From the NCBI RefSeq assembly GCF_031769215.1, contig NW_026782729.1, forward strand, positions 558,001 through 622,000: a DNA stretch of 64,000 bases, written 5' to 3'. Shown piece after piece: positions 13 through 28,017 of the stretch. The notes beneath the pieces were generated by a model. The model saw only the letters and a list, made by a program, of their open reading frames with translations. It had not been told where the DNA came from and did no database searches. The position numbers and the translations under genes were made by a program. Source of the DNA: Ylistrum balloti. Taxonomy: Eukaryota. Each line of letters begins with the position of its first letter. Position 1 is the first letter of the stretch.

Positions 13-1361
13 CCTGTCTGTCGGCGGGAGTAAGTTTGGACAGTATGGATCTAACCATCGGGAACACCAAAGCGTTTAGGAAACCTATGACTGGAACTGA
101 AATAATGAGAAAAATCATAAAAAAAATATGAACTTCGAAACCGTTTTTGATATAAGCGTTTAATTTTCCAAATCATAATCGCAGGGTATGAACAAATGGA
201 CATTTAATCATATAAAGCTTTTCCAGTCAGACATTTATTCGAAATAACAAATGTTAATTGACTCATTATCAGAAACTTACCCATAAACAACATGACGTCA
301 TCAACCGCTAATGCCTCCACAGTATAAGCTGACATTCCAGAGATAGCACTTAAAATTGCGATGATTTCTTCGGCGAAAAATATCTGCAGACCTTTGACAA
401 TAGCTACACCTAATATCATTGAAGTTGAAACCGAAATTGCCGTGTAATACCCAACTTTAACAGACGTCCAACAAAATGGTGCATTTAATTGGTACAGAAT
501 TTCTGTACTTGGTCTACCAAGAAGAGAAAGCGACGCCGTCATGAAAGTTATTATTCCCAGTACATATTTGTATCTTATAGGAGATGCCTGAAAATAGAAT
601 ATAAATGATGCGCGGGCATTTTCAAACATGGAGGTTTTGGCTATAAACATGGCACGTGGGCGTGAATGCGGCAGAAACAACACAATAACCAGCACTGAAG
701 TGGCTGTTGCTGCACACACGCATATGTTTGCATAGAAGAAACCGACACGCTGAATAACGAACCCAGAAACGAACCCCGAAAGTGCCGCACCTATTCCGAT
801 GGCGGCTTCAAGACATGTTATCATTAGAGTTCGTTGCTTTCCGGGCCTTGTAACATCCGAAATGTAGGCGAATCCAACTGAAAGTACTCCGTAAAAACCA
901 CCTCCGAAGCCATTTAACATGTTGCCAATTAAGAGGTAGTAAACACTGAACTCAAAATAAATGATAATACTGGAAATGCAATTACATAGAAAATATAAAC
1001 TTATTGTAAACGTTAGAACTCGTGTTCTCCCAAAACGGTCACTCAGTCCGCCAATCACCCCACAAGTTACGAGAGCTGGTAAATTATCTGCCAGCTTGAA
1101 GTAGATATTGAACCTTGAAGCCGTCTTCTGTACAGTAGTCCTTTCATGGTAGACTTCAGTCGACGTGTTTACGTTACAGGCGGAACCCTCAGAAGTAGAT
1201 AGATTGGAGTTAGGATACATGTGAATCTGAAAGTAGTGGACTATATATTGGGACGTTAACAGTGTTGAAAGTAACCCACTAAACAAAAATAGCATTAACA
1301 CCACTGCGAGGGTTCCGTGCGACCACCTCAGGGAATTGGGCTTCGGAGGTTTCTTCTCCAT
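13..1361 (-). CDS. SLC46-family MFS transporter paralog 1 (PCFT/SLC46A3-like), partial; coding exons 281-1361 and 13-96, remaining exons lie left of the window
   Basis: ATG at 1361. Exon 1 ends TTTATGG|GTAAGT (phase 1). An 84-bp exon 2 (tttcag|...CAGG|gtacgt) encodes VPVIGFLNALVFPMVRSILSKLTPADRQG. Contains MFS motif A GGLSDRFGR, YISDVT, LEAAIG and LYQLNAPFCW, all typical of SLC46. Confidence 0.9.
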
Positions 1362-4679: not shown

Positions 4680-7600
4680 TTATCCTTCATCCCCAATCAA
4701 TTTCTGAGTCTCAGTAATGATTTTCGTCACATCTTGTATTGGTAAGGTTTTCGATCCGCCATTTTTGACACGATAAATCCTGAAAAAAGATTGACAAACA
4801 AGAACTAGATTATTCTAAAAAAATATTCTTCCAGCATGTAATATACGGATATTTCTAATACTTTATCTTGATTTGGTCGTTAGTCCTTTAGGTGGATGTC
4901 ACTCATTCCCATCCACTTAACGATGTAATTTTTAAAAATCCTATTAACGCTGAGGGTTTTAGCATTTACGTTGATATACCTATGCAACACTGACCTATTA
5001 CCAGCAAGCCCAAATGCTCCATTTCCACAACTTATTTTATCCGGAAAAAAGTTTTTAACCATCAGAAAAGCATAACCATAAAATGGACAATTCTGACAAC
5101 CGAGCAAGATAGGAGGAGGTAAAGATGAATACGCAAATACCTTAAATTAAAAGTGTAAAGGGAACATTATATATTACTTATACAAAACAATAGATGTAAA
5201 ACCAAAGAACATAGCCCATACTCACAATAAGAAAAATACATTCAGGAAAGCGGAGCCCGCAAGAACGAGGAAAACCAAGCCCCGCATCGTCTCAACGGTC
5301 TCTTTGTAGATTACCGATGTTCCAAGACTGCTAGCCATTCCTGCTAATATCTCAACCACAGCTATCCCCGCAAAAAGAGCACCTACGATAATAACGTGAT
5401 ACATATCATTTGTAAATAATGTGATTCGTACAGTGTTAATTAATGCGATCCCTATAATAGTACGAACTGTAATACATACAACGGTAAATACTTTGATGTA
5501 AGTAATGTAATGTAAAATGATAAATAACGTGATACACACAACGGTAAATAATGTGATGTAAACAATGATAAATAACGTGATACATACAACGGTAAATAAT
5601 GTGATGTAAACAATGATAAATAACGTGATACATACAACGGTAAATAATGTGATGTAAACAATGATAAATAACGTGATACATACCACGGTAAATACTTTGA
5701 TGTAAGTAATGTAATGTAAAATGATAAATAACGTGATACATACAACGGTAAATACTGTGATGTAAACAATGATAAATAACGTGAACACATGCAACGGTAA
5801 ATACTGTGATGTAAACAATGATAAATAACGTGAACACATGCAACGGTAAATATTGTGATGTAAACAATGATAAATAACGTGATACATACAACGGTAAATA
5901 ATGTGATGTAAACAATGATAAATAACGTGATACATACAACGGTAAATAATGTGATGTAAACAATGATAAATAACGTGATACATACAACGGTAAATAATGT
6001 GATGTAAACAATGATAAATAACGTGATACATACAACGGTAAATAATGTGATGTAAACAATGATGAACAACGTAAACAATGAACACATGCAACGGTAAATA
6101 CTGTGATGTAAACAATGATAAATAACGTGTAAACAATGATAAATAACGTGATAACGGTAAATAATGTGATGTAAACAATGATAAATAACGTGATACATAC
6201 AACGGTAAATAATGTGATGTAAACAATGATAAATAACGTGATACATACAACGGTAAATAATGTGATGTAAACAATGATAAATAACGTGATACATACAACG
6301 GTAAATAATGTGATGTAAACAATGATAAATAACGTGATACATACAACGGTAAATAATGTGATGTAAACAATGATAAATAACGTGATACATACAACGGTAA
6401 ATAATGTGATGTAAACAATGATAAATAACGTGATACATACAACGGTAAATAATGTGATGTAAACAATGATAAATAACGTGATACATACAACGGTAAATAA
6501 TGTGATGTAAACAATGATAAATAACGTGATACATACAACGGTAAATAATGTGATGTAAACAATGATAAATAACGTGATACATACAACGGTAAATAATGTG
6601 ATGTAAACAATGATAAATAACGTGATACATACAACGGTAAATAATGTGATGTAAACAATGATAAATAACGTGATACATACAACGGTAAATAATGTGATGT
6701 AAACAATGATAAATAACGTGAACACATACAACGGTAAATAATGTGATGTAAACAATGATAAATAACGTGATACATACAACGGTAAATACTGTGATGTAAA
6801 CAATGATAAATAACGTGATACATACAACGGTAAATAATGTGATGTAAACAATGATAAATAACGTGATACATACAACGGTAAATAATGTGATGTAAACAAT
6901 GATAAATAACGTGATACATACAACGGTAAATAATGTGATGTAAACAATGATAAATAACGTGATACATACAACGGTAAATAATGTGATGTAAACAATGATA
7001 AACAACGTGATACATACAACGGTAAATAATGTGATGTAAACAATGATAAATAACGTGATACATGCAACGGTAAATATTGTGATGTAAACAATGATAAATA
7101 ACGTGAACATATGCAACGGTAAATAATGTGATGTAAACAATGATAAATAACGTGATACATACAACGGTAAATAATGTGATGTAAACAATGATAAATAACG
7201 TGATACATACAACGGTAAATAATGTGATGTAAACAATGACAAATAACGTGATACATACAACGGTAAATAATGTGATGTAAACAATGATAAATAACGTGAT
7301 ACATACAACGGTAAATAATGTGATGTAAACAATGATGAACAACGCGAACACATGCAACGGTAAATACTGTGATGTAAACAATGATAAATAACGTGATACA
7401 TACAACGGTAAATAATGTGATGTAAACAATGAAAATAACGTGATACATACAACGGTAAATAATGTGATGTAAACAATGATAAATAACGTGATACATACAA
7501 CGGTAAATAATGTGATGTAAACACTGATAAATAACGTGAACACATTCAACGGTAAATAATGTGATGTAAACAATGATAAATAACGTGATACATACAACGG

Positions 7601-10600
7601 TAAATACTGTGATGTAAACAATGATAAATAACGTGATACATACAACGGTAAATAATGTGATGTAAACAATGATAAATAACGTGATACATACAACGGTAAA
7701 TAATGTGATGTAAACAATGATAAATAACGTGATACATACAACGGTAAATAATGTGATGTAAACAATGATAAATAACGTGATACATACAACGGTAAATAAT
7801 GTGATGTAAACAATGATAAATAACGTGATACATACAACGGTAAATAATGTGATGTAAACAATGATAAATAACGTGAACACATTCAACGGTAAATAATGTG
7901 ATGTAAACAATGATAAATAACGTGATACATACAACGGTAAATACTGTGATGTAAACAATGATAAATAACGTGATACATACAACGGTAAATAATGTGATGT
8001 AAACAATGACAAATAACGTGATACATACAACGGTAAATAATGTGATGTAAACAATGATAAATAACGTGATACATACAACGGTAAATAATGTGATGTAAAC
8101 AATGATAAATAACGTGATACATACAACGGTAAATACTGTGATGTAAACAATGATAAATAACGTGATACATACAACGGTAAATAATGTGATGTAAACAATG
8201 ATAAATAACGTGATACATACAACGGTAAATATTGTGATGTAAACAATGATAAACAACGCGATACATACAACGGTAAATATTGTGATGTAAACAATGATAA
8301 ATAACGTGATACATACAACGGTAAATACTGTGATGTAAACAATGATAAATAACGTGATACATACAACGTTAAGTAATGGGGTACATGTACATTCAATGGT
8401 AAGTTATGTGGTACATGTACATTCAATGGTAAGTTATGTGGTACATGTACATTCAATGGTAAGTTATGTGGTACATGTACATTCAATGGTAAGTAATGGG
8501 GTACATGTACATTCAATGGTAAGTTATGTGGTACATGTACATTCAATGGTAAGTAATGGGGTACATGTACATTCAATGGTAAGTAGTGTGATATCATGAA
8601 TGAGCCGATAGTGTGTTTCTACTACAATAACAACAATGGTAAAATGCTATCCGTAGAATTTTTTATGTTGTATTGACGACATGCGCTCATGATATTATGT
8701 CTACAAGGTTACTTTGATAGAGAAATGAAGAATATAGTGATCAGATGATAAATAACTGTACAGATAGATATTGCGATGAAAAGAGATGTTAAGCCTGATT
8801 AAGAGTGTGCGATGAAAAGATAAACCTATACTGACAAATGTTATGAATAAACAAATATGCACGTATTATGAATAGATATCAGTAACGTAAACATAAATGT
8901 AAATGAATTGATAAATGACAAAGCATGTTGTGAAAGTGACATCGTGATTATGAATGCATCGATATTTTAATAATATTTATTTGGATAAATAGATATGGTA
9001 CCGTTATTTCATTATCCAGCAGATATCGACACTCTTCGGTGTATAGAGAATGGCCATTTTTTTTTTTATAAAACTCATGACATTGAAAACAAATTCAAGA
9101 AAATACCAATATGTCAACATAATCATGTTCCAAACTAAAATTCCATCAAAGTAGAGGAAAATGAACAGAAGAAAGATTTACACGGAGACCTTTGTACAAG
9201 GAGAATAAGACCAGGTGCTCTGAAAGAGTAATGGTTTTCGGCTTCATCGACGACACCCGCCATGCAAGACTTGCTCAATCCAATCTCAATAAATAATTCA
9301 AAACACAGGTCAGGGCCATTCTAAAGCCTTTGAATACATGCAGAAATATGACAGTATAGCAATAACTTCCATAAATAAAAGCAGATGTAACTGTTGATAT
9401 GATGAGAGAAATTTGAAAGCATTGTGGTGAATAGAGAGGGACTTCTTATGAGTATCATGTTAATGTGAGTTGGAATTTAATAGTCCAGGCATCCAATGGG
9501 CCATATGATATGAACATCCCATCGGAAAGAGTAAGGAAACACTTACCTTGCCTGTCCGGGGGTGTAAGTTTGGAAAGCATCGCCCTGATTATCGGGAACA
9601 CCAATCTGTTTAGAAAACCAATGACCGGAACTGCACAACAGAAATAAGATGTATGTCGAAATATATGACCCATTTTCCAAAACGATTGTTTTGAAGAGTT
9701 ACTGATTAGGTATATCTTTCTATAATCGCTCAAACGAACTAAAGGATTGGTAAAGCAAAGATCAATTAATAGTACACTCTATGACGATTAGGACTAGATA
9801 TATTAAGACTTAAATGGAGATCATATTATAAAAAAAAATGTTTGAGTAAACTCAAATCATGTCTAGATAGATTAGAAAGGACAGTTATTATTATTTTTTA
9901 TCAGATCGGAGCAACGATCACAGAATATATATCAGCTTGTAAAATGTTGTAGAACAGGAATATTTCACACACTTTCAAACATTTTTACAAAATAGACCGC
10001 TAATTTCTTTGTCTGATCTGTTCAATAACTCAGAAATACCATCTCATGTTTCCTTGTCTTTCAAAACATTTCAATAACCTCAAAATCCGATATATTTTTG
10101 TCATTGTACAGCTCACACCGAAAGCGTTATTTTTTTTATTAAAAAGTCATTATCACACACACTCTCGGAGGAAAGCTGACCTTACCCAGAAAGAGGATTT
10201 GATCACTGAGGGCAAATGCTTCGACAGTGTTTGCTGCCATCCCTGAGATACCACCAAAAATGGCGATGACTTCGTCAACGAACCATTTCTGCAACACTTT
10301 AACACAAGCTACTCCTAAAATCATCGAGGCGGAAGTTGAAATGGCCGAGTAATATCCCACTTTCAAAGAACTCCAACAAAATGGTGCATTCAACTGATAC
10401 AGAACTTCTATATTTAGCTTGCCTAAAATCGAAAACGTTCCGAACATGAAACTTACAATTGCCAGGACATATTTATATCTTTTGGGAGATGTTTCAAAAT
10501 AAAATATAAATGATGCACGAACATTCTCAAGAGTTGTGGTTTTTGATATTAATATGTCAGGAGGGCGTAAAGGTGGCAGAAACAACACAATCACCAACAC

Positions 10601-11257
10601 GGAACTAAACGCTGATGCGGACACGAATATACTTGCATAGAAGAATCCGAAACTCTCAATAATGAACCCAGAAACGAACCCCGAAACTGCCCCACCAAAT
10701 CCGATGGAGGCTTCAAGAAAAGCTATCATTAGAGTTCGCTGTTTTCCTGGGCTTGTGACATCCGAAATGTAGGCGAAACAAATAGATAATGTACCATATA
10801 AACCACCTCCTATGCTGTACACTGCGCTGCTAAACAGGAGGTAGTAAACGTTGATTTCGAGATAAATCAAAATATTTGTAAGACATGCCGATAGAAAAGA
10901 TAAAATGGTTGTATATATTAGAATCCGTGTCCTTCCATACCGATCACTTAAACCTCCTATGATGCTAGATGTAATGAGAGCGGGTAAACTTTCTATCAGT
11001 GCTCTGTAAATACCGATCTGTGTGGCTGTCTTCTGTACTGTTGTTCTTTCATGATATTCCTTTGTCGACGTGTTAACGTTGCAAGCGGACATATTGTCCG
11101 ACGAAGACAGACTCGAGTTCGGAAACATGCGAGTCTGTAGGTAATACACGGTGTATTGAGTCGTCAACAGAGAGGAAAGTATCAAACCGAACAAATAGAA
11201 CATCAAAGTTACTGCAAGGAATCCGTGCGAACACCTCAAGGTAGCCTGATTGTCCAT
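4680..11257 (-). CDS. SLC46-family MFS transporter paralog 2, ~470 aa; exons 10186-11257, 9547-9630, 5226-5382, 4680-4779
   Basis: All introns are GT-AG with consistent phases (1,1,2); the exons sum to 1413 nt. Motifs: GGLSDRYGR, LEASIG, LYQLNAPFCW, IIRAMLSK, GALFAGIAVVE. C-terminal tail is IYRVKNGGSKTLPIQDVTKIITETQKLIGDEG*. Confidence 0.9.
5392..8367. repeat. 48-bp minisatellite, ~60 copies, in intron 2 of paralog 2
   Basis: Unit gtgatacatacaacggtaaataatgtgatgtaaacaatgataaataac. It produces the 16-aa periodic ORFs in the track. Confidence 0.97.
8369..8588. repeat. 30-bp tandem repeat, ~7 copies, abutting the 48-bp array
   Basis: Unit ggtacatgtacattcaatggtaagttatgt, which partly resembles the 48-bp unit. 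Confidence 0.95.
9180..9265 (-). repeat. Interspersed repeat copy, same family as 3530-3640
   Basis: Reverse complement reads gtgtcgtcgatgaagccgaaaaccattactctttcagagcacctggtcttattc. Confidence 0.75.
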
Positions 11258-13504: not shown

Positions 13505-13592
13505 CACAGAGATTCTGAGGAAAAGGAAAAATAAGACCAGGTGTTCTGGAATGGTAAGCAATTTTTGCTTCATCAGCGACACAAGCAATGTC
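13505..13592 (-). repeat. Interspersed repeat copy, same family as 3530-3640
   Basis: Reverse complement reads gtgtcgctgatgaagcaaaaattgcttaccattccagaacacctggtcttattt. Confidence 0.75.
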
Positions 13593-14159
13593 AATCTTGG
13601 TAAATCCAAGTAAGTCGTGTCACGTTCCCAAAGAGAACATTGTAAACAACAGAATCAACAGGTATAATACCGAGCAACAAACACGTCCAACGTCATGTCG
13701 CATTAGAATTTTCTTCACAGTGAGATCATCATGAACACCGAAAATCTTCCTATCATTTTCATCATTCTGTATCTCCCGAAACCCTGTATTGTGAATTTGT
13801 CTATCAGTTACAGATATATCGCAGGAAAATCGAGATGCAGAGAACAACAAACCCTTGAATATTTTATCAAATGCAACACGCAACGGGGTGAAGATGCAGG
13901 GTGAAGCTCTCCGAAAACTTCACAGTAGGTAAATTAGATCATCGCATTTATCATACAGCTTTGTGGGAAGGTGTCCATATTGATCGCGGTGTCTTAAAAT
14001 ATATAGGAAGAGTTTGTTGTGTCCGTGCTTTCCAATTGAGGTGAATATGTATGTTGGAAAGTAAATTCTTTTGATTTAAAGACAGGATGTGTATATATCT
14101 GAAAATGAAATGAAATTACATCGATTATAACGCAGAACTATAATAAACCGTTTAAATGC

Positions 14160-14940
14160 ACACAGTTGATTATGTAGCAGAATGTAAGACTCCCTTGTAA
14201 TATACAGTAAATCATGTAGAGTAATCATATTTTGTAATATTACAATGCGGAGATACCAATGTAATGGAATTGTAACTCTCTGTTGTAATACACTCAGTTA
14301 ACAATGTCGCAGAATTATAACACATTTGAAATACACACTGTTTATTATGTGACAGCATTATAACGCTCTTGTACACTCAGTTAACAATTCACAGAATTAT
14401 AACACATTTGTAATACACACTGTTTATTATGTGACAGCATTATAACGCTCTTGTACACTCAGTTAACAATTCACAGAATTATAACACATTTGTAATACAC
14501 ACTGTTTATTATGTGACAGCATTATAACGCTCTTGTTGTACACTCAGTTAACAATGTCGCTGAAATATTACACATTTGAAATACACACATTTTATTATGT
14601 GACAACATTATAAAACGCTTGTAATACATTCAGTTAACAACGTAGCAGAATGTTTACATCCTCTTTTAATAGACACAGTTAACCGTGTAGAAGAATCATA
14701 ACCCTCTCTTATGATACACAGAAAGTTATAACAATTTTTTGTTATAAATACTTTATTAACCATATAGCCGAATGTTAACCCCTTTTTACAATACAGTAAA
14801 TCATGTAGCAGAATTAGATCAGTCTCTTGTAACATAACACAGTTAACTGTGGAGCAAAATTAGAACACTCTCTTGTCCTAAACAAGAGTACGTTATGTAG
14901 AATTAGTATAATTTAATGTAATGAACCAGTTAAACAGTAT
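14160..14940. repeat. Degenerate ~41-bp repeat with an 82-bp dimeric core
   Basis: Near-identical units start at 14371 and 14453 (gtacactcagttaacaattcacagaattataacac...). Diverged copies flank them. Confidence 0.8.
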
Positions 14941-15503
14941 CCATGTTTTAAGATTGGGTTTATTTAATAAATTTAACACAATTATTGGTAGTGGAGAACT
15001 TATCTATGTTATATCATCAAAAAACCAAATAATTTGTATGCCAAATGTAGAATACATCTGAATCTACGATATCTATGAAGCTTTTCAAAAGTATTATAAC
15101 GCTGACATTAGGTAATTCTCGCTGTTAAAGCAAAGAGAAACTTGAAGGAGTATGCTCAAACATTTAAAACATTTATTTGAAACAAGAATGTCAGTGGTAT
15201 ATTATAATGAAATTCTATATTTAATAGTGAAAACGCTTCATCCATAATAAACAGAAAATCTATCACGCATAGTGGGGGTAGATTTCCGTTGGGTGTACTC
15301 GTTACATTCCTTTTTAAAGGTTTCATTCTACAAGAAATTGTTAATGAATGATTAGAATGATTCAAAAGTCTAAAACATTAGAGAGTTTGTTCACGACACA
15401 ATCATTGCTTTTCAAACCCGTAGATATCTAATGATATTCCGAATTTCAGAGTGCACACACAGTGTGCAGTATCTGTATGCTAAATTCTATCACAGAATCT
15501 TCT

Positions 15504-18422
15504 TTACCCTTCGTTCTCAACCAATACCTGAGTACCAGTAACGTCTTTCGTCACATCATGTATTGGAATGATTTTCGATCCTCCATTCATTATGCGAAAA
15601 ACCCTGAAATAGAATGACACACACAAAAAACTTATTCGAGGACGTTACCATCTGACCAATTCTTTAGTAATAAACTTATGGTGGGGCTTAATCATTGGAC
15701 GTCAGGCTCCCCTTTATAAAATATAACGTCAAAGGTCCCGAACTGGGACTTTTTTCATTTATTCGATGCAGTATTTAAATTTTGAAATTTGAACATTCAT
15801 TTTAGCATTACTTCGATCTTATATGTTGTTTATGAAACTAGATTTAAGAGCAGAAAGTAGAGACATGTAAAAATCACCTATACAGAAAAGAATGTTCCCG
15901 TATTTTCTTTTTAAAAGATATTTCGTGTGACGCTCTGGTATCGAATAACAATGGATGTGAATACTTCTACAAGGATTGAATCAATAACACTGTTAAATTT
16001 CAATTTAGGTAACTTTTTAATATTTTGGTAACCTTGGAAATGGCAATATTGAATATTTGGAACCAGATATATGTGTAAAAAGTGATCAATTTTACCACAT
16101 AATGACTAAAAATGTGTATACTACACTATCCCCGTCTGGAAAAAACTTTAAATAACGAATTAAAAGCAATCTAGTTTATACCGAATACAAAACAGATATA
16201 TCACACAAAAAAAGGTGATTTGGTAACCCTTTAATAAAAGAATGATATAATCTTTGTAATAAAAAAGCAAATGCATACTACCACATGAAGAACCATTAGA
16301 GAATCAGGGTAAGGATAGTGTATACTTACATCAAAAGACATGCTGTTATTAGGGACAAACCACCAAACACGAGGAAAACGAAGCTCCGCATGATACCAAT
16401 AGTTGCCACGTAGATGGTCGACGCTCCAACATTGCTTCCAAGGTTTGCCGCTATTTCTACCACAGCTATTCCCGCGAATAGGGCACCTACATTAGCAAAT
16501 AATTGGTATCTATAATGGTTATAACGTCATACAGATATAATGATATGGAAAGAAAACCACACGCGAGCAAATAATGCAATCTAATTGATAAATTAAGTGG
16601 TTATAAAACCAGATATACGTGGAAAGAAAAGCGATAGCATACTGATGTTGATATGAATGCGTAATGACAAATGAAACAAAAGACTGCCACATAAAGCTGG
16701 ATGCATACTAATAAAAGGTATGTAGAGATGTCCTCAGACTAAAAATAACTTTTCAGAAAACAACTGATATTATGAGTTCTAATTATTTTGAAACATTAAA
16801 TATATATATCAAATTGCAAATAATGTAGAAATCAGTATTCATACTGACATATAAACAGACCTGTGTTAATGTGTTTGTATAGACGAATCCTGCTACGCAT
16901 GTTGCATTATTGCATTGTGACATCTAGGTTTGCAACAAGGCAAACCAAAGTTTTGTTTAATGATCGTTGTGAATTTTATTGCGCCACATACCCTGTCTTT
17001 CCGGAGGTGTAAGCTTGGATAACATAGATCTGATCATCGGGAATACCAACGCACTCAGGAAACCTATCGCTGGAGCTGAAACATTAATAATGCATTGTAT
17101 GTTTTATTTCATAGATAAGATTTAATTTGTACTTCGTAACAATTGAAAGGAAACAATTAGAAAAACGAAATAGATATCAGCATTCTTAATGCAGCATTGG
17201 TTTAATCCAATTGATGACGGACAAGGATCTTGAGGATTCGGACATTTTGTGATGTTGCATTGTTTTGGGTTCAGATTATTATCGATATCGGCATTGTTTG
17301 GCAGCATTAAATCATGAAGTGAATTAATTTGAACTTACATAGAAAGAGCATAAGGTCACTGACGGCAAATGCCTCAACAAGACAAGCTACCAACGAAGAG
17401 ACGGCACTAAAAACTGCGATAATTTCCTCCACAAAAATTTTTTGCAGGATTTTGACTGTGGCTACACCTAAAATCATCGAGGCGGAAGTCGATATGGCCG
17501 AGTAATATCCAACGTATACAGATGTCCAACAAAATGGTGCATTCAACTGGTACAAAATTTCCGTATTTTGTTTACCCAAAAGGGAAAGCGCACCAATCAG
17601 GAAAGTAATTATTGCGAGTACATATTTGTATCTCGAAGGAGACGCTCGAAAATAAAATGTGAAAGATGCGCGTGCATTTTCGAAGATTGAAGTGTCTGAT
17701 AACAACCTTACGGGAGGGCGTGACGGCGGAAGAAACAGTACAACTACCAACATGGCACTGGCCGCTGATGCAGAAACACATAAACTTGCATAAAAGAATC
17801 CAATACTACTAAGAATGTATCCGGAAATAATTCCCGATAGTGCCGCGCCAACTCCCACGGAGGCTTCAAGAAGAGTTATCATCAAAGTCCGTTGTCTTCC
17901 TGGAATTGTTACATCCGAAATATAGGCGAATCCAATGGACAGTGCCCCAAATAGACCGCCTCCTATACTGTACAGTGTGCTGCTGATAATGAAATAGTAA
18001 ACATCGATCTCAAAGTAAATGACAACACTGGAAAAACATGTCGATAAAACAAAACACGTTGTAGTAAATGAAAGAATCCGTGTTCTCCCAAACTTGTCAC
18101 TAAGGCCACCAATGATCCCGCTTGTTATAAGAGCAGGTATTGTTTCAGCAAGTTTTGTGAAGATATTGAGACGAGATGCACTTTTCTCAACCGCTGTCCT
18201 CTCACGGTATGATTCTGTCGATTTGTTAACGTTGCAGGCGGACCCATCTGAAGAAGACAAACTGGAGTTGGGAAACAAGTCAGCCTCTAGGTAGCTGAAT
18301 ACATACTGAGTTGACACCAACGACGAGAGAACCAAACTAAACATAATTAGCATTAACGCTACTCCAAGCATTCCGTGCGACCACCTCAGGGTACCGTGCT
18401 GGGAATGAGGCTTTTCCATCAT
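15504..18422 (-). CDS. SLC46-family MFS transporter paralog 3, ~474 aa; exons 17339-18422, 16992-17075, 16330-16486, 15504-15603
   Basis: The ORF track starts at a TTG (18440); the first ATG is at 18422 (MMEKPH). Exon sizes 84/157/100 and phases match paralog 2. Motifs: GGLSDKFGR, LEASVG, LYQLNAPFCW, MIRSMLSK. Tail is VFRIMNGGSKIIPIHDVTKDVTGTQVLVENEG*. Confidence 0.9.
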
Positions 18423-18519
18423 GGAATTGTATAATGCCAATTTTATGCCTAGAATGGAAAGTCAATGCATGCAGTTATTATACAGATACGTATTTAAGCA
18501 ATAAATCCAAAAAAATTGC

Positions 18520-19810
18520 AAGATGAAGCGTGGAAACCGAAACATTTAACATAAGGATGACGAAGTGTAGAAACCAAAATATTTCATATAAGGTTGATGA
18601 AGCGTAGAAACCGAAACATTTAACATGAGGAGCGTGGACCAAAACATTTAACATAAGGTGAAGTGTGAAGTAAGATCAGAGTTCAAAGCATTAAATGTAC
18701 AATGTACCACACTTAAAGTGGTAACTTAATGATTTAACATAAGGTTGATGAAGCGTGGTAACCGAAACATTTAACATAAGGCTGACGAAGTGTGGAAACC
18801 AAAATATTTCACATAAGGTTGATGAAGCGTAGAAACCGAAACATTTAACATGAGGATGATGAAGCGTGGAAACCGAAACATTTAACATAAGGTTGATGAA
18901 GCGTGGAAACCGAAACATTTAACATAAGGTTGATGAAGCGTAGAAACCGAAACATTTAACATAAGGATGATGAAGCGTGGAAACCGAAACATTTAACATA
19001 AGGTTGATGAAGCGTGGAAACCGAAACATTTAACATAAGGCTGACGAAGTGTAGAAACCAAAATATTTCACATAAGGTTGATGAAGCGTGGAAACCGAAA
19101 CATTTAACATAAGGTTGATAAAGCGTGGTAACCGAAACATTTAACATAAGGTTGATGAAGAAGAAACATTTAACATAAGGCTGACCAAACCGAAACATTT
19201 AACATAAGGCTGACGAAGTGTGGAAACCAAAATATTTAACATAAGGTTGATGAAGCGTGGAAACCGAAACATTTAACATAAGGTTGATGAAGCGTGGAAA
19301 CCGAAACATTTAACATAAGGTTGATGAAGCGTGGAAACCGAAACATTTAACATAAGGCTGACGAAGTGCAGAAACCAAAATATTTCATATAAGGTTGATG
19401 AAGCGTAGAAACCGAAACATTTAAATAATTGCAGAAACCAAAATACATAAGGTTGATGAAGCGTGGAAACGAAACAAACATTTAACATAAGGATGATGAA
19501 GCGTGGAAACCGAAACATTTAACATAAGGTTGATGAAGCGTGGTAACCGAAACATTTAACATGAGGTTGATGAAGCGTGGAAACCGAAACATTTAACATA
19601 AGGTTGATGAAGCGTGGAAACCGAAACATTTAACATAAGGTTGATGAAGCGTGGAAACCGAAACATTTAACATAAGGATGACGAAGTGTGGAAACCAAAA
19701 TATTTAACATAAGGTTGATGAAGCGTGGTAACCGAAACATTTAACATAAGGTTGATGAAGCGTGGTAACCGAAACATTTAACATAAGGTTGATGAAGAGA
19801 GGAAACCGGA
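18520..19810. repeat. 37-bp minisatellite, ~34 units, just upstream of the paralog 3 coding start
   Basis: Unit ccgaaacatttaacataaggttgatgaagcgtggaaa, interspersed with a variant (ccaaaatattt / ctgacgaagtg). Confidence 0.95.
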
Positions 19811-21138
19811 ACGTAAGTTTGAAGAATGGAGGAAATCATCTGTGATATTAAGCAATTAATTTCGTATTGTGAGTATTAAACGTACTACTATAGCTCACCT
19901 CATTTGACTGAACAGTTTACCCAGATGGAAGCAAGGCAAAACACCGAACAATAAACAAGTAATGGTGAATACAGGATGTCCGTATTAAAAATATACAAAT
20001 GAACGTGACGATGAAAAGAAACACAGACGTATCACATGAGCTCCCTACAACATCACTTGAACTTGTTGTTATCTCGGTCACTCAGGCTATCGTGTGAAAA
20101 TACAGACTAACAAATTTAAAAGTCACAGCCAAAATCTGGACGCATCAATATGAGTCTAGTAAGAGATTTCACCTGCACGGACTGTATCAGATTTGTAATA
20201 TATAATGAGGTGAAATGTACAAGGTTTTGATAACACACTATCTTTGCTATTTACGGATGAACATCCTTGATTACACTCGTGTGAATGCTAAACATAAACT
20301 AATGACAGACAACAAATCGGTGACTCGAGTGTATACCTCACCGATATAGCAATATCACGTGTAAACTTTGTTTACATAATATCCGATAACCGCTATTTCA
20401 GTATTGCTGTTATTGACGCGACCAAATTGCTATCCGAGAAACTCAAATAAAAACAGTTAACATATTTGTGATATCAACATTTTAATAACAATAAAATATT
20501 TCAGCCACTGCCTTAGATTTTTTTTAATGCTGTATAATCCTATTTCTTTACAAACAAAACCAAGCAAATGAAAATTGAACCCATTAAATGACAATAAATT
20601 ACAAAATAAAACACCACTACTGAAAAATCTTGTTTGTAGTCATAAACATTAAAATATCTTCAAATCAACGGATATGAAATTTAGCGTTAAATCTCATAAT
20701 TGAAAAGCAAGTAGAATTTAAGAGTAAAAGGCTGATTTTAAGCAATGGACATCAGACTTTGACTTCCTTAAATCTTATTCCATGACGTCTAAAGCACTTT
20801 GTAGATAATGCGGAGTCGGAAGAACATTCGAAATGAGCAAATAATCTTCAAATTACTTTCCGACTAAATGATTTGTAACTTAGTGTCTAAGTGACAACTG
20901 TTTAAATGTTGTTTTGGAACCCTTTCACTTAAAATCATATCAATAGCAAACTCTAAATGTTTCCACTTGGAATCATTCTATATTAACAGGGAAGTCTAAA
21001 AATGAAGAAGTGTCCTACAAATACAAAACAGTAAACATGGAACTATTTAATGGGAATCTTCCAAGAAAATTATATATATATTCTCAGAGTCTGGGTTAAT
21101 AGCGCTAATGCTAAACGATCGCGTTTCGAATTATTTTT

Positions 21139-21400: not shown

Positions 21401-22515
21401 CAATACCGACATGTCAACAGAGTCTCAATTTAAACTCAAGTCGAAAAATCAAAGGCAAAATATTTATTTACATGTTAACCTTGGTGAATCCAAGTTAGCA
21501 ATGTCACAATCCCAAATAAAATACAGAGTAAACAACAAAGAAATCACTAGGCGTACTAACGAGTTTCAACCACGTGGCAGTAAACGAAACAAGAATGGTG
21601 TTAATGTTACCCTGGTAGGGGTTATATATACTAGTTCAAAATGCAGAGTTGTTTTCCTGTTTTGGGGGTTGAAGATTTGGGAGTTTTCAGGGGTTAATAA
21701 ATAAGCACATTGAGCATACCTTCAGACAATGAATTAGAATCATCCCATACTGAATGCCATGACAATTCGGAAATAATGATAGTATTTATATCAATCCGTT
21801 CCAAATAAGTATTTCATTAATTTAGGCATGAACGCATCACCACTGTATACCTCGTATAGATCTTTATATAAGCACATGTACAAGCATATTACAGTTATTA
21901 TATTGATGTAGGTGGGGAGAGGAAAGATATTTGAAATACGAGGAATTTTTTACACTTGAATACAATATTCTCATCATATGTACCCTACATTTGTATGAAA
22001 CCGTAAACGGTATACATAGAAAAGCTGTAATCCAAATATAGCGGAATTTGCGAAATGTACACAGTAGTCCAGGACACCAATTCGAGCACAGTAGAGAGAT
22101 ACGTCAATTTGCATTGTGTAATCGAAGAACAGGCACGAAGGCAAAAGAGCACTCGAAGAGGCGTCGTGATGATGGATATAGTCGGAGGCACACTGGGCAG
22201 CAGGGGAGAAAGGGGACATAAAGAAAGAATTGTATGAGGCTTGGCTGCTACATTTTCACTGACGTTATACCATCCGTCATGCCTCAAGGACAGTAAACCT
22301 CTTTGTGTGACGAGATTTAAACATCTTCATGATATTTTGCAATTACTCAAATTGAGATTGACCTACTGTGATTTCGTTTTTTCTTTCTTTCTTTTTAATT
22401 CAATCTCTTGCTTCCTTCAAAATTAATAAGCACAGTATATTCGTCATGATGATGTATCTCCCAGGTAGGAATCAGGCCTTTCTCCCTATGGTGTCTCTTA
22501 CACTTCCGCCTCCTT

Positions 22516-24809
22516 CTAACTAGTTCTCTTACAACGGTAAAGTCTGCGAAAACAAACATGAAGTGTTGTTTTTATTTGATAAAAGAATGGGTTCCTGGAC
22601 AAAATAATTAAGGTGAGCTAGTTCTTGATAGTTTTAAGTTATTTCATTTAAAATGACAGAATATAAAACTTTACAATACTTACAGCAGAAGGCCTATAGA
22701 GAGTACAGAGAATGCAGCATACACAAGGAAAGCCGTTCCTCGGAACATCTCGATAGTGTTTATGTAGATGATCTTGACTACAACATTGGCTGTCAAACTG
22801 ACACATATCTCCATAACAGCCAATCCCGCAAATAAGGCACCTGATGGTGGGAAAATGCAACATTTGTACGTTTTAGTTTAGCTTCCTCGACATAAAAAGA
22901 GCTGGCGTGTTACATTTTATTTGCGTCTTGCGATCGTTAAGTTAACGGGTAAAAGTTCATTGTCCTGAAAAAGTTCTGGAAGATTTTAATACTACCAGTT
23001 AAATTGGAAGCTTTACTAGTTCCAAGATTTTCTAGTTATACTTTGGCGATATACAAGTATTACCTTGTTGGTGAGGTGGCGTTATTTTGGACATGATAGC
23101 TCGCATCATCGGGATAGTGAGTATACTTAGCACCGCAAACAACGGGACTGAAACAGACATATAAATCTAGTAGTCTACAAGTAGTGCTTTGTGGAAAAAC
23201 AACTTAATGACTATATTATTTTAGACTTCATCTATTTAAGAACAATTATGAAACAAGTAACTGGAAAAGCAAGATTCTGAAAATACCTTTTGATAGTTAG
23301 ATCACCAGAATAGGCAAATAATGAATTAAAGCGTTGCCTGCAATCTCGAAGACTGCACAGAAGCTACAAAAGAGAATGGCCCAAAAATCACCTCTTTTTG
23401 GCGCGAAGGGAAGACTGCGAGGGGTCTTACAGAGGAAAAAACGGAATATCCATAGAAACCCCATGTGGTCGGGCGTGTGACCACGCGTTTTTCACGTCCG
23501 TTGGGAGAAAATTAATCATTGATATTTAGGTGAAAAGTAAGCGCGTTAACACTGCGCCATCCGACCGCACATTTAATGGACATCATCATCAAAACCAATA
23601 CTTACCTAAGAAAAGTGTCAGATCATTGTATGCAAACGCTTCTAATATACAGGAAGTAGCATTAGATAGGGCACTCAATATAGCGATGACTTCTTCTGCG
23701 AAGAAACGTTGTAGAAGTTTGATGGCTGCTATTCCAACAAGCATACTTGAGGCGACTGAAAGCGACACAAAATGTCCTATCTTCACTGGAGACCAACAAA
23801 ATGGAGTGTTAAGTGCATACAAGATTTCAATTCTACTCTTTCCTAGTCTAGATAAACACGCCAATACAAATGTGGCACCACATATGATATACACGAATCT
23901 CTTCTTGGAAGATCGAAAATAAAACTCAAAGGCTGCCTTGGCTGTGCCACATGTAGCTGTCGCACCACGGGTTGTTCCTTGGTTAGCGATATCTGTGCTC
24001 CTGTCACCATAATTAGTTTCGTTGTCTTTGGAGAGTGTGGTTCTTCTGTAGGATTGTGTGGTAGTGTTACTGGTATAGCTCGTTATGTTTAAGAGAGAAT
24101 CTGGCAGGGGAAACACCACTACTAGAACTGCCGCTAATACCAAGAAACAGGAACACAGGCTGGTATAAAAATAGCCAAACTTTTCAATGATATATCCGGA
24201 CACAAGTCCGGAAACGGTCATTCCAAGTCCGATGGATGCATCCAATAACGTGATAAACAGGCTTCTTGGCCTTCCTGCTTCAGTTATATCAGACACGTAT
24301 GCAAAGCCAATTGATAAGGCGCCATAAATCCCTCCACCCACATTGTTTATGACGGCAAAAAGTATAAACAGGTTGATATCAAATGAACATTTTACTCCAA
24401 TTGTTGTGAGTAGAATTCCGAGTAAAGTAAAAGTGACATTAACAAATAAAGCCCTCCTACGCCCATACCTGTCACTCAACGAACCAAGAACACTGCTCGC
24501 GAGTATGGCTGGCACAGCCTCAGCTATTGTCTTGTACATGTCCCACTTCGCTGTAGTCTGCTGCACGGTCGTCCTCTCTAGATAACTTTCGGAGGACTTG
24601 TTCACATCACAAATAGATGTGTGTTTATTATCGAACGCTGAAGAGTTCGGAAATTTTCTGGAAGCTATGGTCTGGTAGACATATTGCGTTATGGACAACC
24701 CGTACAATTCCACTGCAAGTGAAAGGAACAGAAGAGTCACAGCGATAAACAGATGGCGCAGTCTGTATCTAATGGTTGGTACATTGATGAGGGGTTCATG
24801 TTCTTCCAT
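22516..24809 (-). CDS. SLC46-family MFS transporter paralog 4 (most divergent), ~490 aa; exons 23606-24809, 23064-23147, 22684-22840, 22516-22543
   Basis: The 84-bp and 157-bp internal exons have canonical splice sites and the same phases as the other paralogs. Motifs: GSLSDRYGRR, YVSDIT, LYALNTPFCW, MMRAIMSK, GALFAGLAVME. The last exon (ttttcgcag|A CTT TAC CGT... LYRCKRTS*) is less certain. Confidence 0.85.
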
Positions 24810-25329: not shown

Positions 25330-27050
25330 TCCTTCATTACGAGACTGATAGTTACATTATCACTACTCATAATAGATATCGACATAACGAGACTGACAGT
25401 TACACTATTAGTACTCATAACAGATATCGACATAACGAGACTGACAGTTACACTATTAGTACTCATAATAGATATCAACATAATAAGACCGACAGTTACA
25501 GCGATACTCATTATCAAAACAACCGTTATCACGAGACTGACAGTACAGTGTTATTTGCATGACGGTTACAGTGTTAATGACAGTTACAATGTTACTAGAC
25601 TGACAGTTACAGTATTACTAAACTGACAATTACAGTGTTACTAGCATGACAGTTACAGTGTTATTTGACTGACAGATACAGTATTACTAGATTGACAGAG
25701 TGTTACTAGACTGGCAGTTACAATGTTACTAGACAAACAGTTACAGTGTTACTAGACTGACAGTTACAGTGTTACTAGACTGACAGTTACAGTGTTACTG
25801 ACAGTAACAGTGTTACTAGACTGACAGTTACAGTATTACTGACAGTTACAGTGTTACTAGACTGACAATTACAATGTTACTAGACTGATAGTTACAGTAT
25901 TACTAGATTGACAGTTACAGTGCTACTAGACTGACAGTTACAATGTTACTGACAGTTTCAGTGTTACTAGACTGACAGTTACAGTGTTACTAGACTGACA
26001 CTTACAGTGTTACTAGATTGACAGAGTGTTACTAGACTGACAGCTATAATGTTACTGACAGTTACAATGTTACTTCATTTGCAGTTACAGTGACAGTTAC
26101 AGTATTACTAGATTGACAGTTATGGTATTATTAGACTGACAGCTACAATATTACTAGACTTACAGTTACAGTGTTACTAGACTGACAGTTACAGTGTTAC
26201 TGACAGTTACAGTGTTACTAGACTGGCAGTTACAGTGTTACTAGACAAACAGTTACAGTGTTACTAGACTGACAGTTACAGTGTCACTGACAGTTACAGT
26301 GTTACTAGACTGACAGTTACAGTGTTACTAGACAAACAGTTACAGTGCTACTAGACTGACAGTTACAGTGTTACTAGACTAACAGTTACAGTGTTACTGA
26401 CAGTTACAGTGTTACTAGACTGACAGTTGCAATGTTACTATACTTCAGTTACAATGTTACTAAACTGACAATTACAATGTTACTAGATTGACAGTTACAA
26501 TGTTACTTGACTGGCGGTGACAGTATTACTAGACTGACAGTTTCAATGTTACTAGACTGACAGTTACAATGTTACTAGACTGACAGTTGCAGTGTTACTG
26601 ACAGTTACAATGTTACTAGACTGACAGTTGCAGTGTTACTAGACTGACAGTTACAGTGTTACTGACAGTTACAGTGTTACTAGACTGACAGTTACAGTGT
26701 TACTAGACTGACAGTTATGGTATTATTAGACTGACAGCTACCGTTTTACTAATTTTAACAAATACCGTCGTATCGAGACTGACGGCCACAGTGTTACTAA
26801 TTATAACAAATGCCGTCATAACGATACTGACAGCTACAGTGTTACTAATAATAGCAAATGCCGTCATAACGAGACTGACAGTTACAGTGTCACTAATTAT
26901 CACAAATGCCGTCATAACGAGACTGACAGTTACAGTGTCACTAATTATCACAAATGCCGTCATAACGAGACTGACAGTTACAGTGTCACTAATTATCACA
27001 AATGCCGTCATAACGAGACTGACAGTTATATTGTATTGTTATAAAAGTGA
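25330..27050. repeat. Nested minisatellite: 48-bp units flanking a ~1.15-kb array of 23/18-bp units
   Basis: The core gactgacagttacagtgttacta repeats over ~25570-26720. 48-bp units containing the same core lie at ~25370-25500 and ~26800-27030. Confidence 0.92.
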
Positions 27051-27234
27051 TGATTGACGGCTATGTTATATCATTCATTAGACCGATAACACTTATAACG
27101 AGGCAGACAGTTACAATGTATACTCGTCATATCTGGTCCGTCATTACAAGATAAATGTAGCCATTTCAATGGGTTACTAATTAGACCAAGTTTCACCCTA
27201 ACGAGACGATCAGTTACAAAGTGTTAGTAATCAG

Positions 27235-28017
27235 ATCTAGTCACGTAATTACGGTATTTTTTGTCAGTGAGTTATCTAGTCACGTAATTACGGTATTTAT
27301 TGCCAGTGATTTATCTAGTCACGTAATTACGGTATTTATTGTCATTGAGTTATCTAGTCACGTAATTACGGTATTTACTGCCAGTGAGTTATCTAGTAAC
27401 GTAATTACGGTATTTATTGTCAGTGAGTTATCTAGTCACGTAATTACGGTATTTATTGTCATTGAGTTATCTAGTCACGTAATTACGGTATTTATTGTCA
27501 TTGAGTTATCTAGTCACGTAATTACGGTATTTACTGCCAGTAAGTTATCTAGTCACGTAATTACGGTATTTACTGCCAGTGGGTTATCTAGTCACGTAAT
27601 TACGGTATTTATTGTCGGTGAGTTATCTAGTCACGTAATTACGGTATTTATTGTCATTGAGTTATCTAGTCACGTAATTACGGTATTTATTGTCAGTGAG
27701 TTATCTAGTCACGTAATTACGGTATTTACTGCCAGTGAGTTATCTAGTCACGTAATTACGGTATTTACTGCCAGTGGGTTATCTAGTCACGTAATTACGG
27801 TATTTATTGTCAGTGAGTTATCTAGTCACGTAATTACGGTATTTATTGTCAGTGAGTTATCTAGTCACGTAATTACGGTATTTATTGCCAGTGAGTTATC
27901 TAGTCACGTAATTACGGTATTTATTGTCATTGAGTTATCTAGTCACATAATTACGGTATTTATTGTCGGTGAGTTATCTAGTCACGTAATTACGGTATTT
28001 ATTGCCAGTGAGTTATC
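27235..28017. repeat. 39-bp minisatellite, ~20 copies
   Basis: Unit ttatctagtcacgtaattacggtatttattgtcagtgag. It explains the 299-aa periodic ORF. Confidence 0.96.

What the first reader, a model, noticed from the sequence alone, without database searches (positions are those of the whole stretch)
18520..19810. Minisatellite built from ISG15-type ISRE cores directly upstream of an SLC46 transporter
Seen: by hand count, about 17 of ~34 units contain an intact GAAACCGAAAC (most as GGAAACCGAAAC); others carry variants. The first lies ~110 bp from the paralog 3 ATG, apparently inside a 5' UTR intron (acceptor-like AG at 18449-18450). Known: GGAAACCGAAAC is the core of the human ISG15 ISRE (IRF consensus GAAANNGAAA). 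Bivalves have IRFs and an interferon-like antiviral response. Mammalian SLC46A2/A3 and a Drosophila SLC46 import muropeptides, and human SLC46A2 imports cGAMP. Inference: tandem amplification may have created a copy-number-tunable IRF enhancer that makes this one paralog immune-inducible.
Basis: partly seen in the sequence, partly recalled or inferred. Interest (0 to 1): 0.72.

Follow-up and report, generated by a model that had tools for sequence, protein, structure and literature searches.

The report
ISRE-like minisatellite in scallop SLC46 intron
A real 1.3-kb tandem repeat, half of whose 37-base units carry a perfect interferon-response-type motif, sits just upstream of the start codon of one scallop SLC46 transporter gene, but every test possible here says it looks like an ordinary young repeat, and its role as an immune switch is untested.

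Summary
Window 18522-19812 is a 37-bp minisatellite of 33 units: 17 carry GAAACCGAAAC, 13 carry GGAAACCGAAAC, and 23 keep AACCGAAAC. The genome is the scallop Ylistrum balloti. The array lies 114 bp upstream of the ATG of the third of four tandem SLC46A3-like genes on the minus strand.

The unit and its flank are unique in the 648-Mb genome, so this is not a mobile element. The 12-mer is the human ISG15 ISRE core. The genome has at least four IRF genes, and its viperin gene has one perfect ISRE about 110 bp before its ATG.

No test supports a selected function:
- Minisatellites with spaced GAAANNGAAA cores are common here (1820 matches against 1766 for the reversed control).
- The core is no better conserved than the rest of the unit.
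- Motif-breaking variants have spread through the array.
- Homologous genes in three other scallops lack the array and any nearby ISRE.
- No RNA data exist for this species.

Best reading: a neutral, lineage-specific minisatellite (about 0.6). A working IRF enhancer remains possible (about 0.3). The scan noted another IRF-like minisatellite elsewhere in this genome and judged it ordinary.

The parts
18522..18653 (.). Proximal block of the 37-bp minisatellite (about 3.5 units; the first intact GGAAACCGAAAC is at 18532)
   Evidence: TRF 18525-18631; unit list
18654..18739 (.). 86-bp non-repeat spacer that interrupts the array
   Evidence: Unit segmentation; sequence
18740..19812 (.). Main block of the minisatellite, about 29 units. 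A-type units carry GAAACCGAAAC. B-type units carry GAAACCAAAAT, with both CpGs lost. The GGTAACC variant lacks the first GAAA. The distal unit decays into the unique flank (GGAAACCGGAAC).
   Evidence: TRF 18732-19812, 30 copies, score 1418; unit types and per-position table
18449..18450 (-). AG of a 3' splice site (ttccattctag|GC) about 30 nt before the ATG. It marks the end of a 5'-UTR intron that holds the array.
   Evidence: A pyrimidine tract plus YAG at -27 to -33 is present in 10 scallop paralogs. The equivalent site in Argopecten is a real GT-AG intron end in transcript L033.
18472..18484 (-). TGTATAATAACTG, a branch-point-like motif 22-34 nt upstream of the acceptor. It is also present before both Mizuhopecten paralogs.
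   Evidence: Comparison of upstream regions; the branch-point reading is inference
17340..18419 (-). First coding exon of SLC46A3-like paralog 3 (ATG at 18419-18417; a second in-frame ATG at 18422-18420)
   Evidence: 100% match to residues 1-360 of P0001; Pfam MFS_1
16990..17076 (-). Coding exon 2 of paralog 3
   Evidence: tblastn of P0001, residues 361-389
16329..16487 (-). Coding exon 3 of paralog 3
   Evidence: tblastn of P0001, residues 389-441
15507..15602 (-). Last coding exon of paralog 3
   Evidence: tblastn of P0001, residues 442-473
19892..19905 (-). Candidate 5' splice site AAATGAG|GTGAGCT (cut 19899|19898), 86 bp beyond the distal end of the array. If it is used, intron 1 is 19898-18450 (1449 nt) and 89% of it is array.
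   Evidence: Read from the sequence. Inference only; there is no RNA evidence.
23607..24809 (-). First coding exon of paralog 4, the upstream neighbour. Its later exons are at 23062-23148 and 22683-22850. The array lies between this gene's 3' end and paralog 3.
   Evidence: tblastn
10187..11257 (-). First coding exon of paralog 2 (P0009); no such array lies upstream of it
   Evidence: tblastn; motif positions
282..1361 (-). First coding exon of paralog 1 (P0008); no such array lies upstream of it
   Evidence: tblastn

Best explanation
This is a young, locus-specific minisatellite (VNTR) that fills most of the 5'-UTR intron, or at the least the 1.4 kb just upstream of the start-codon exon, of SLC46A3-like paralog 3 in Ylistrum balloti. 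One 37-bp stretch was amplified by replication slippage and unequal exchange or gene conversion. That stretch happened to contain GAAACCGAAAC, so the IRF/ISRE-type core was copied passively with it.

The array evolves in concert. Runs of identical neighbouring units alternate with a CpG-decayed B variant and a GGTAACC variant, and both variants have themselves been copied. It leaves the branch-point-like motif and the splice acceptor intact, and it lengthens the intron. Nothing shows that it was selected for a function.

Because it offers 17 perfect IRF dimer-type sites and 6 further single sites next to a promoter, it may well be bound incidentally by scallop IRFs. That step is inferred, not shown.
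For: - The array is real and unique. The unit (32 nt, up to 3 mismatches) hits only this locus, 23 of 23. BLAST of 5 units and of the 1.3-kb distal flank finds only this place.
- The setting is rich in minisatellites. By my own sum of the array spans in the TRF table, about 15% of the window is minisatellite. Different, unrelated units lie between and inside all four paralogs, and the homologous Mizuhopecten locus is also full of arrays.
- Genome-wide, three GAAANNGAAA cores spaced 15-45 bp occur 1820 times against 1766 for the reversed control. I count 24 separate loci in the 100 matches the tool lists, all on contigs C13-C100.
- The strict pattern GAAASSGAAAC x3 gives 18 matches at 3 loci against 53 control matches. 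The other two loci lie beside LINE fragments or in repeat-only DNA.
- Inside the array, the 11 core positions are 94.1% conserved against 94.5% for the other 26. The most variable A-type position is inside the core, where GGAAAC becomes GGTAAC.
- Homologous genes in Mizuhopecten, Argopecten and Pecten have no related unit and no GAAACCGAAAC. They have no GAAANNGAAA within about 2 kb upstream of the ATG. The transcript-defined Argopecten exon 1 and intron also have none.
- The three sister paralogs in the window have no ISRE core near their starts.
Against: - The core is a perfect match to a high-affinity vertebrate ISRE (PMC5131898).
- Oyster IRF2 and IRF8 activate a mammalian ISRE reporter (PMC5557890). 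Scallop CfIRF1 and CfIRF2 are reported to bind ISRE (as cited in PMC13524488).
- This genome has at least four IRF DNA-binding-domain genes.
- Its viperin gene carries one perfect GAAAGTGAAACT about 110 bp upstream of the ATG, so ISRE logic is probably in use here.
- A strict-type array is rare (3 loci), and this is the only one beside a gene of an immunity-linked transporter family.
- A mussel SLC46A3 contig was listed at 17-fold among the hemocyte DEGs after a repeated Vibrio encounter (PMC6697025).
- Concerted evolution can hide selection on the core, so the lack of extra core conservation is weak evidence.
Confidence: 0.6

Rival explanations
1. The array is a working IRF-responsive enhancer. 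It would act as a natural multimerised ISRE in the first intron or proximal upstream region. IRFs activated by infection would bind it and raise transcription of this one SLC46A3-like paralog, with output depending on the number of intact units.
For: - There are 17 exact GAAACCGAAAC and 23 AACCGAAAC within 1.3 kb, starting 114 bp from the ATG.
- The core is identical to the ISG15 ISRE core.
- Bivalve IRFs act on ISRE reporters or bind ISRE.
- At least four IRF genes are present.
- Viperin in the same genome has a canonical ISRE at about -110.
- The array is unique to this locus and is not a transposable element.
- SLC46 family members import cGAMP and muropeptides in humans and flies (paper titles and abstracts).
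- A mussel SLC46A3 contig is listed among hemocyte DEGs after repeated Vibrio contact.
Against: - There is no expression, binding or accessibility data of any kind. The only public run that holds the locus is DNA.
- ISRE-core minisatellites are no more frequent than the reversed control.
- The core shows no extra conservation, and motif-destroying variants have spread.
- No ISRE lies near the homologous genes of three other scallops or near the three sister paralogs.
- The extended ISRE consensus is not fully met: T instead of A/G at -2, and A instead of T after GAAAC.
Confidence: 0.3
2. The array grew out of an older, single functional ISRE that already served this gene's promoter or intron. 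It would then be an amplified relic of a real element, as the scan proposed for another array in this genome.
For: - The oldest-looking edge unit, next to the unique flank, already reads GGAAACCGGAAC, one mismatch from the core.
It is a lead only; I did not test it.
Against: - No single-copy counterpart of the unit exists upstream of paralogs 1, 2 or 4 (no hit at 25 of 37 or better elsewhere in the window).
- Pecten and Argopecten also have no hit at 25 of 37 or better. Mizuhopecten has two weak ones (26 and 25 of 37), but they lie in a different intron, in the opposite orientation, and carry no ISRE core.
- No ISRE lies near the homologous promoters.
Confidence: 0.07
3. The array is the internal satellite of a transposable element, or part of the 3' UTR of the upstream paralog 4.
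For: - Many bivalve minisatellites ride on mobile elements. A hammerhead-type array of that kind lies in this same window.
- The array is downstream of paralog 4.
Against: - The unit and the 1.3-kb flank are single-copy in the genome.
- The array starts about 2.9 kb beyond the last mapped coding exon of paralog 4 and ends 72 nt before a conserved splice acceptor of paralog 3.
Confidence: 0.03

Closest known systems
Vertebrate ISRE / IRF-E elements (e.g. the ISG15 promoter ISRE, GGGAAACCGAAACTGAAGCC)
   Same: The 12-mer GGAAACCGAAAC is identical, with two GAAA half-sites 2 nt apart. It lies close to a gene start. IRF-family readers are present in the genome.
   Different: There are 17-23 copies in a tandem repeat rather than 1-2 conserved sites. 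The motif is in reverse orientation relative to the gene and is probably intronic. It is not conserved in related species. The flanking consensus bases are not met. No binding or induction data exist.
Regulatory VNTRs near gene starts (human INS VNTR, MAOA-uVNTR, SLC6A4 intron-2 VNTR).
   Same: A minisatellite of tens of bp per unit in the promoter or first intron, with transcription-factor-like motifs in each unit. Copy number is a plausible quantitative expression variable.
   Different: For those VNTRs, length polymorphism and expression association were measured. Here neither polymorphism nor expression is known.
Repeat-borne interferon enhancers (MER41 and other TE-derived STAT1/IRF1 sites in mammals).
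   Same: Repetitive DNA supplies ready-made IFN/IRF-type motifs next to genes.
   Different: Those are dispersed TE copies with ChIP and deletion evidence. This is a local tandem amplification, single-locus, with no TE signature.
Ordinary scallop minisatellites, including exon-junction 'mirage' arrays and hammerhead arrays noted elsewhere in this genome
   Same: The unit size class (20-80 bp) is the same, as are the dense occurrence in introns and intergenic DNA of the same gene cluster and the concerted evolution with interspersed variants.
   Different: The unit does not copy a neighbouring exon end or splice site and is not part of a dispersed element. Its only special feature is the IRF-type core.
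Synthetic multimerised ISRE reporters (e.g. the ISRE-luciferase constructs used in PMC5557890)
   Same: The architecture is the same in principle: many ISRE cores in tandem close to a transcription unit.
   Different: Reporters place the cores directly upstream of a minimal promoter. Here the cores are 37 bp apart, half are degenerate, and they probably lie downstream of the transcription start, inside intron 1.

Membership tests
Minisatellite / VNTR | Head-to-tail units of 10-100 bp in many copies | tested here: met
   37-bp period, 30 + 2.9 copies, TRF score 1418; 33 units listed
Minisatellite / VNTR | Single locus, not a dispersed satellite or TE-borne array | tested here: met
   All 23 genome hits of the unit are in this array. 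BLAST of the units and of the flank finds only this place.
Minisatellite / VNTR | Interspersed unit variants that show concerted evolution | tested here: met
   13 unit types among the 26 full-length units. The B variant (6 of the 26 full-length units; GAAACCAAAAT occurs 7 times in the array) and the GGTAACC variant (5 units) are each multiplied. There are runs of identical neighbours.
Minisatellite / VNTR | Length polymorphism between individuals | not testable with these tools
   The only other data set (X1, DNA contigs) breaks 137 nt into the array.
ISRE / IRF-binding element | Core GAAANNGAAA(C) | tested here: met
   17 units with GAAACCGAAAC; 23 with the single-site AANNGAAA form AACCGAAAC
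ISRE / IRF-binding element | Full ISRE consensus (A/G)NGAAANNGAAACT | tested here: not met
   The units read TGGAAACCGAAACA. That is T at the first position and A instead of T after GAAAC. The consensus is quoted from general knowledge.
ISRE / IRF-binding element | Bound by an IRF and confers inducibility | not testable with these tools
   No RNA run exists for this species. IRF genes are present. Bivalve IRFs act on ISRE in the literature.
ISRE / IRF-binding element | Conserved at the orthologous or paralogous promoters, as for the viperin-type ISRE | tested here: not met
   There is no ISRE core within about 2 kb upstream of homologous genes in Mizuhopecten, Argopecten or Pecten, nor upstream of the three sister paralogs.
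ISRE / IRF-binding element | Motif class over-represented relative to a composition-matched control | tested here: not met
   1820 against 1766 (loose pattern) and 18 against 53 (strict pattern) for forward against reversed pattern
SLC46 transporter (the neighbouring gene) | MFS fold with full-length similarity to a known SLC46 member | tested here: met
   Pfam MFS_1 at 1.7e-14. P0001 residues 22-445 align to chicken PCFT/SLC46A1 (7bc6) at E 1.9e-31. Sources name it SLC46A3-like.
SLC46 transporter (the neighbouring gene) | Transports cGAMP or muropeptides | not testable with these tools
   Substrate unknown. The closest vertebrate names are SLC46A3 and PCFT, not SLC46A2.
Exon-junction ('mirage') minisatellite | The unit copies the adjoining exon end plus its splice site | tested here: inconclusive
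   The unit has no match (25 of 37 or better) anywhere else in the window, including the acceptor and ATG exon. Non-coding exon 1 is not mapped, so its donor could only be compared by eye with the candidate at 19899; I saw no resemblance.

The most novel reading that the evidence does not exclude
Local tandem amplification has built a natural roughly 17x ISRE enhancer in the first intron of one SLC46 paralog. Scallop IRFs would then switch on a cyclic-dinucleotide or muropeptide importer during infection, and array length would set the dose. That would be an invertebrate example of a VNTR creating an interferon-type regulatory link from scratch.
Probability: 0.15. Interest if true: 0.7.

Novelty: new member of a known kind. 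Interest (0 to 1): 0.3.

Why it matters
If the array were shown to bind IRFs and to make this paralog inducible, it would be a clean natural case of regulatory innovation by repeat expansion. It would also link the invertebrate IRF response to an SLC46 importer. As it stands, it is mainly a caution. In a genome where a large share of the DNA is minisatellite, arrays that carry perfect transcription-factor motifs next to interesting genes are expected by chance. The useful by-products are:
- a transcript-supported 5'-UTR intron model for scallop SLC46A3-like genes;
- a positive control showing that viperin in this species has a canonical promoter-proximal ISRE.

Tried and rejected
- **Mobile-element origin.** Rejected: the unit and the flank are single-copy.
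- **Common descent with the other arrays of the SLC46 cluster, in this window and in three other scallops.** Rejected: the best z is 4 for a 12-base match among 28 comparisons.
- **A single-copy ancestor of the unit near other paralogs or in other species.** None found. The only hits are two weak 25-26 of 37 matches in a different intron and the opposite orientation in Mizuhopecten.
- **RNA evidence for the transcript start and for induction.** Not obtainable. The only run that holds the locus proved to be DNA, because its contigs run straight through the introns. I laid reads only on 15400-18519 and kept the array itself out, because the tool says it turns long repeats away.
- **TATA box plus initiator reading of the 70 bp between the array and the ATG (TATAATAA at 18483-18476, CCATTCT at 18457-18451).** Considered, then dropped in favour of branch point plus splice acceptor. 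The YAG is conserved in 10 paralogs, and an Argopecten transcript splices exactly there.
- **The conserved 100-bp block 21472-21575 versus 13588-13686 as non-coding exon 1.** Unresolved. Only the paralog-3 copy has a GT after it.
- **ISRE cores upstream of the four IRF genes.** None near their ATGs; uninformative, because their transcript starts are unknown.
- **Rfam.** No family reached its gathering score anywhere in the window, the array included.
- **Exon joining.** Protein searches used the database protein P0001 or single exons by reference.

Full report
**What is there**

The stretch 18522-19812 is a genuine minisatellite. Tandem Repeats Finder reports a 37-bp period at 18525-18631 (2.9 copies) and at 18732-19812 (30 copies, 83% matches, score 1418). 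Cutting the array at the TAAGG/TGAGG anchor gives 33 units. 26 are exactly 37 bp, and an 86-bp non-repeat spacer lies at 18654-18739.

The motif counts in the window are as follows, all on the + strand and all inside the array:

| Motif | Count |
|---|---|
| GAAACCGAAAC | 17 |
| GGAAACCGAAAC | 13 |
| AACCGAAAC (a complete single IRF site of the AANNGAAA form) | 23 |
| GAAACCAAAAT (decayed variant) | 7 |

**Whose genome, which gene**

The 377-codon open frame at 17307-18440 (minus strand) is 100% identical to the first 360 residues of a 473-residue protein. NCBI names that protein 'lysosomal proton-coupled steroid conjugate and bile acid symporter SLC46A3-like [Ylistrum balloti]' (P0001).
- It matches Pfam MFS_1.
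- Over residues 22-445 it aligns to the solved proton-coupled folate transporter SLC46A1 (7bc6, E 1.9e-31).
- Its four coding exons lie at 18419-17340, 17076-16990, 16487-16329 and 15602-15507.

Three further paralogs lie on the same strand. Their first coding exons are at 282-1361, 10187-11257 and 23607-24809. 'Paralog 3 of an SLC46 cluster' is therefore correct. The first ISRE-like core starts 114 bp upstream of the ATG.

**Promoter or intron?**

The 140 bp upstream of the ATG was compared across 11 SLC46A3-like paralogs from Ylistrum, Mizuhopecten, Argopecten and Pecten. 10 of the 11 have a pyrimidine tract followed by YAG 27-33 nt before the ATG. In paralog 3 this reads ...gactttccattctag|GC, with the AG at 18450-18449.

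A Logan transcript contig (L033) matches one Argopecten paralog at 99.5%. Its 5' UTR maps to L021:3423-3641 and then jumps to 4143, 27 nt before the ATG. The skipped part starts GTAAGT and ends CAG. The conserved YAG is therefore a real splice acceptor, and these genes have a non-coding first exon.

By homology, which is inference, the Ylistrum array lies in the 5'-UTR intron. It ends 72 nt before the acceptor and 38 nt before a conserved branch-point-like TGTATAATAACTG (18484-18472). A good candidate donor, AAATGAG|GTGAGCT, lies at 19899|19898, 86 bp beyond the distal end of the array. If that donor is used, the intron is 1449 nt and 89% of it is array. The Argopecten intron is about 500 nt.

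I first read TATAATAA and CCATTCT in this interval as a TATA box plus initiator. I dropped that reading because of the cross-species and transcript evidence. No RNA data exist for Y. balloti itself. The only public run that holds the locus gave contigs that are colinear with the introns, so it is DNA. I kept the array itself out of the read-laying run because that tool turns long repeats away.

**Is it a mobile or dispersed repeat?**

No.
- A 32-nt unit pattern with up to 3 mismatches hits 23 places in the 648-Mb genome, and all 23 are in this array.
- BLAST of five units and of the 1.3-kb distal flank finds only this locus.
- The unit is not significantly similar to any other array in the window or in the homologous loci of three other scallops.
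- It has no single-copy counterpart near the other paralogs.

**What speaks for an IRF element**

- The 12-mer GGAAACCGAAAC is contained in the 'ISREcore' probe TGCCTCGGGAAACCGAAACTGAAGCCA (PMC5131898).
- Oyster IRF2 and IRF8 activate a mammalian ISRE reporter (PMC5557890).
- Scallop CfIRF1 and CfIRF2 and oyster CgIRF1 are reported to bind ISRE (summarised in PMC13524488).
- The Y. balloti genome has IRF DNA-binding-domain exons at four loci.
- As a positive control I located its viperin gene. In 4.3 kb upstream there is exactly one GAAANNGAAA. It is the canonical GAAAGTGAAACT, on the gene strand, about 110 bp before the ATG. ISRE logic is therefore very probably in use in this animal.
- SLC46 family members import cGAMP and muropeptides in humans and flies.
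- A mussel SLC46A3 contig is listed at 17-fold among the hemocyte DEGs after a repeated Vibrio encounter (PMC6697025).

**What speaks against a selected function**

1. **The setting is saturated with minisatellites.** By my own sum of the array spans in the TRF table, about 15% of the window is minisatellite.
   - Unrelated arrays lie inside an intron of paralog 2 (5498-8598), downstream of paralog 3 (14283-14651) and upstream of paralog 4 (25335-28017).
   - The Mizuhopecten locus is just as rich in arrays.
2. **Spaced ISRE cores are no more common than a reversed control.** The control is the same pattern read backwards.

   | Pattern, three cores spaced 15-45 bp | Matches | Reversed control |
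   |---|---|---|
   | GAAANNGAAA | 1820 | 1766 |
   | GAAASSGAAAC (strict) | 18 | 53 |

   - For the loose pattern, I count 24 separate minisatellite loci in the 100 matches the tool lists, all on contigs C13-C100.
   - The strict pattern falls at three loci.
   - Of the other two strict loci, one lies beside LINE reverse-transcriptase fragments. The other lies in repeat-only DNA.
   - Arrays built on IRF-type cores are therefore an expected by-product of how many minisatellites this genome holds.
3. **The core is not better conserved than the rest of the unit.** The 11 core positions are 94.1% conserved, against 94.5% for the other 26.
   - The most variable position among A-type units lies in the core, where GGAAAC becomes GGTAAC in 5 units.
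   - The B variant has lost both CpGs and the second GAAA, and has itself been multiplied.
4. **The element is lineage- and paralog-specific.** No related unit, no GAAACCGAAAC, and no GAAANNGAAA within about 2 kb of the ATG occurs at the homologous genes of Mizuhopecten, Argopecten or Pecten.
   - The transcript-defined Argopecten exon 1 and intron also have none.
   - Nor do the three sister paralogs.
5. **The full ISRE consensus is not met.** The units read TGGAAACCGAAACA.

**Verdict**

The most economical account is a neutral, young, locus-specific minisatellite. It arose by slippage and unequal exchange from a 37-mer that happened to contain a perfect IRF-type core, and it now occupies most of a 5'-UTR intron (confidence about 0.6).

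A block of 17 perfect sites next to a promoter could well be bound when IRFs are active. It rests, however, entirely on motif resemblance (about 0.3). A third possibility is that an ancestral single functional ISRE was amplified (about 0.07). The edge unit reads GGAAACCGGAAC, but no unexpanded counterpart was found.

Two earlier notes of this scan bear on the same genome. One describes a conserved ISRE in a cGLR promoter. The other describes an IRF-like minisatellite that was judged ordinary. Both fit this picture, but I tested neither one directly.

Noticed in passing
window 30980-31469: A 45-bp minisatellite whose minus strand matches the Rfam hammerhead ribozyme models below the gathering score (Hammerhead_3 at 41.2 bits, E 1.5e-7; Hammerhead_1 at 28.4 bits). 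It is the same kind as the hammerhead arrays noted elsewhere in this genome.
   Followed up: partly
window 5498-8598: A 3.1-kb minisatellite (48-bp and 30-bp units) lies inside the intron between coding exons 9536-9631 and 5225-5383 of SLC46A3-like paralog 2. Its stop-free frames produce spurious ORFs of up to 1053 codons.
   Followed up: partly
window 25335-28017: Three different minisatellites (units of 48, 23/46 and 39 bp) are stacked directly upstream of paralog 4, starting about 530 bp from its ATG. None carries an IRF-type core.
   Followed up: partly
G000:C731, about 45749 (L031:550, minus strand): The viperin gene of this scallop has a single perfect ISRE, GAAAGTGAAACT, on the gene strand about 110 bp upstream of its ATG. 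It is the only GAAANNGAAA in 4.3 kb.
   Followed up: yes
L021:3423-4170 (Argopecten) and transcript L033: A transcript contig proves a non-coding exon 1 (at least 219 nt) and a GT-AG 5'-UTR intron of about 500 nt that ends 27 nt before the ATG of a homologous SLC46A3-like gene. The acceptor is conserved across scallop paralogs.
   Followed up: yes
window 21472-21575 and 13588-13686 (minus strand): This roughly 100-bp block (72% identity) is the only conserved block between the upstream regions of paralogs 3 and 2. It lies 3.1 kb and 2.4 kb before their ATGs. It could be a shared non-coding exon or promoter, or a 3'-UTR piece of the upstream gene. Only the paralog-3 copy is followed by GT.
   Followed up: partly
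window 36028-37251 (-) and 40145-43111 (-): Two long open frames of 407 and 988 codons have no Pfam match. The first is not related to the SLC46 genes.
   Followed up: partly
G000:C258:238913-239466: Another strict IRF-type array (41-bp unit with GAAACGGAAAC, about 13 copies) lies directly beside LINE-type reverse-transcriptase and endonuclease fragments. No immune gene was seen within 10 kb on either side.
   Followed up: partly
window 15797-18519, run X1: A second data set for this species (DNA contigs) differs from the assembly by 13 substitutions and 4 small indels over about 2 kb of paralog 3, mostly in introns. Its contig breaks 137 nt into the array.
   Followed up: no
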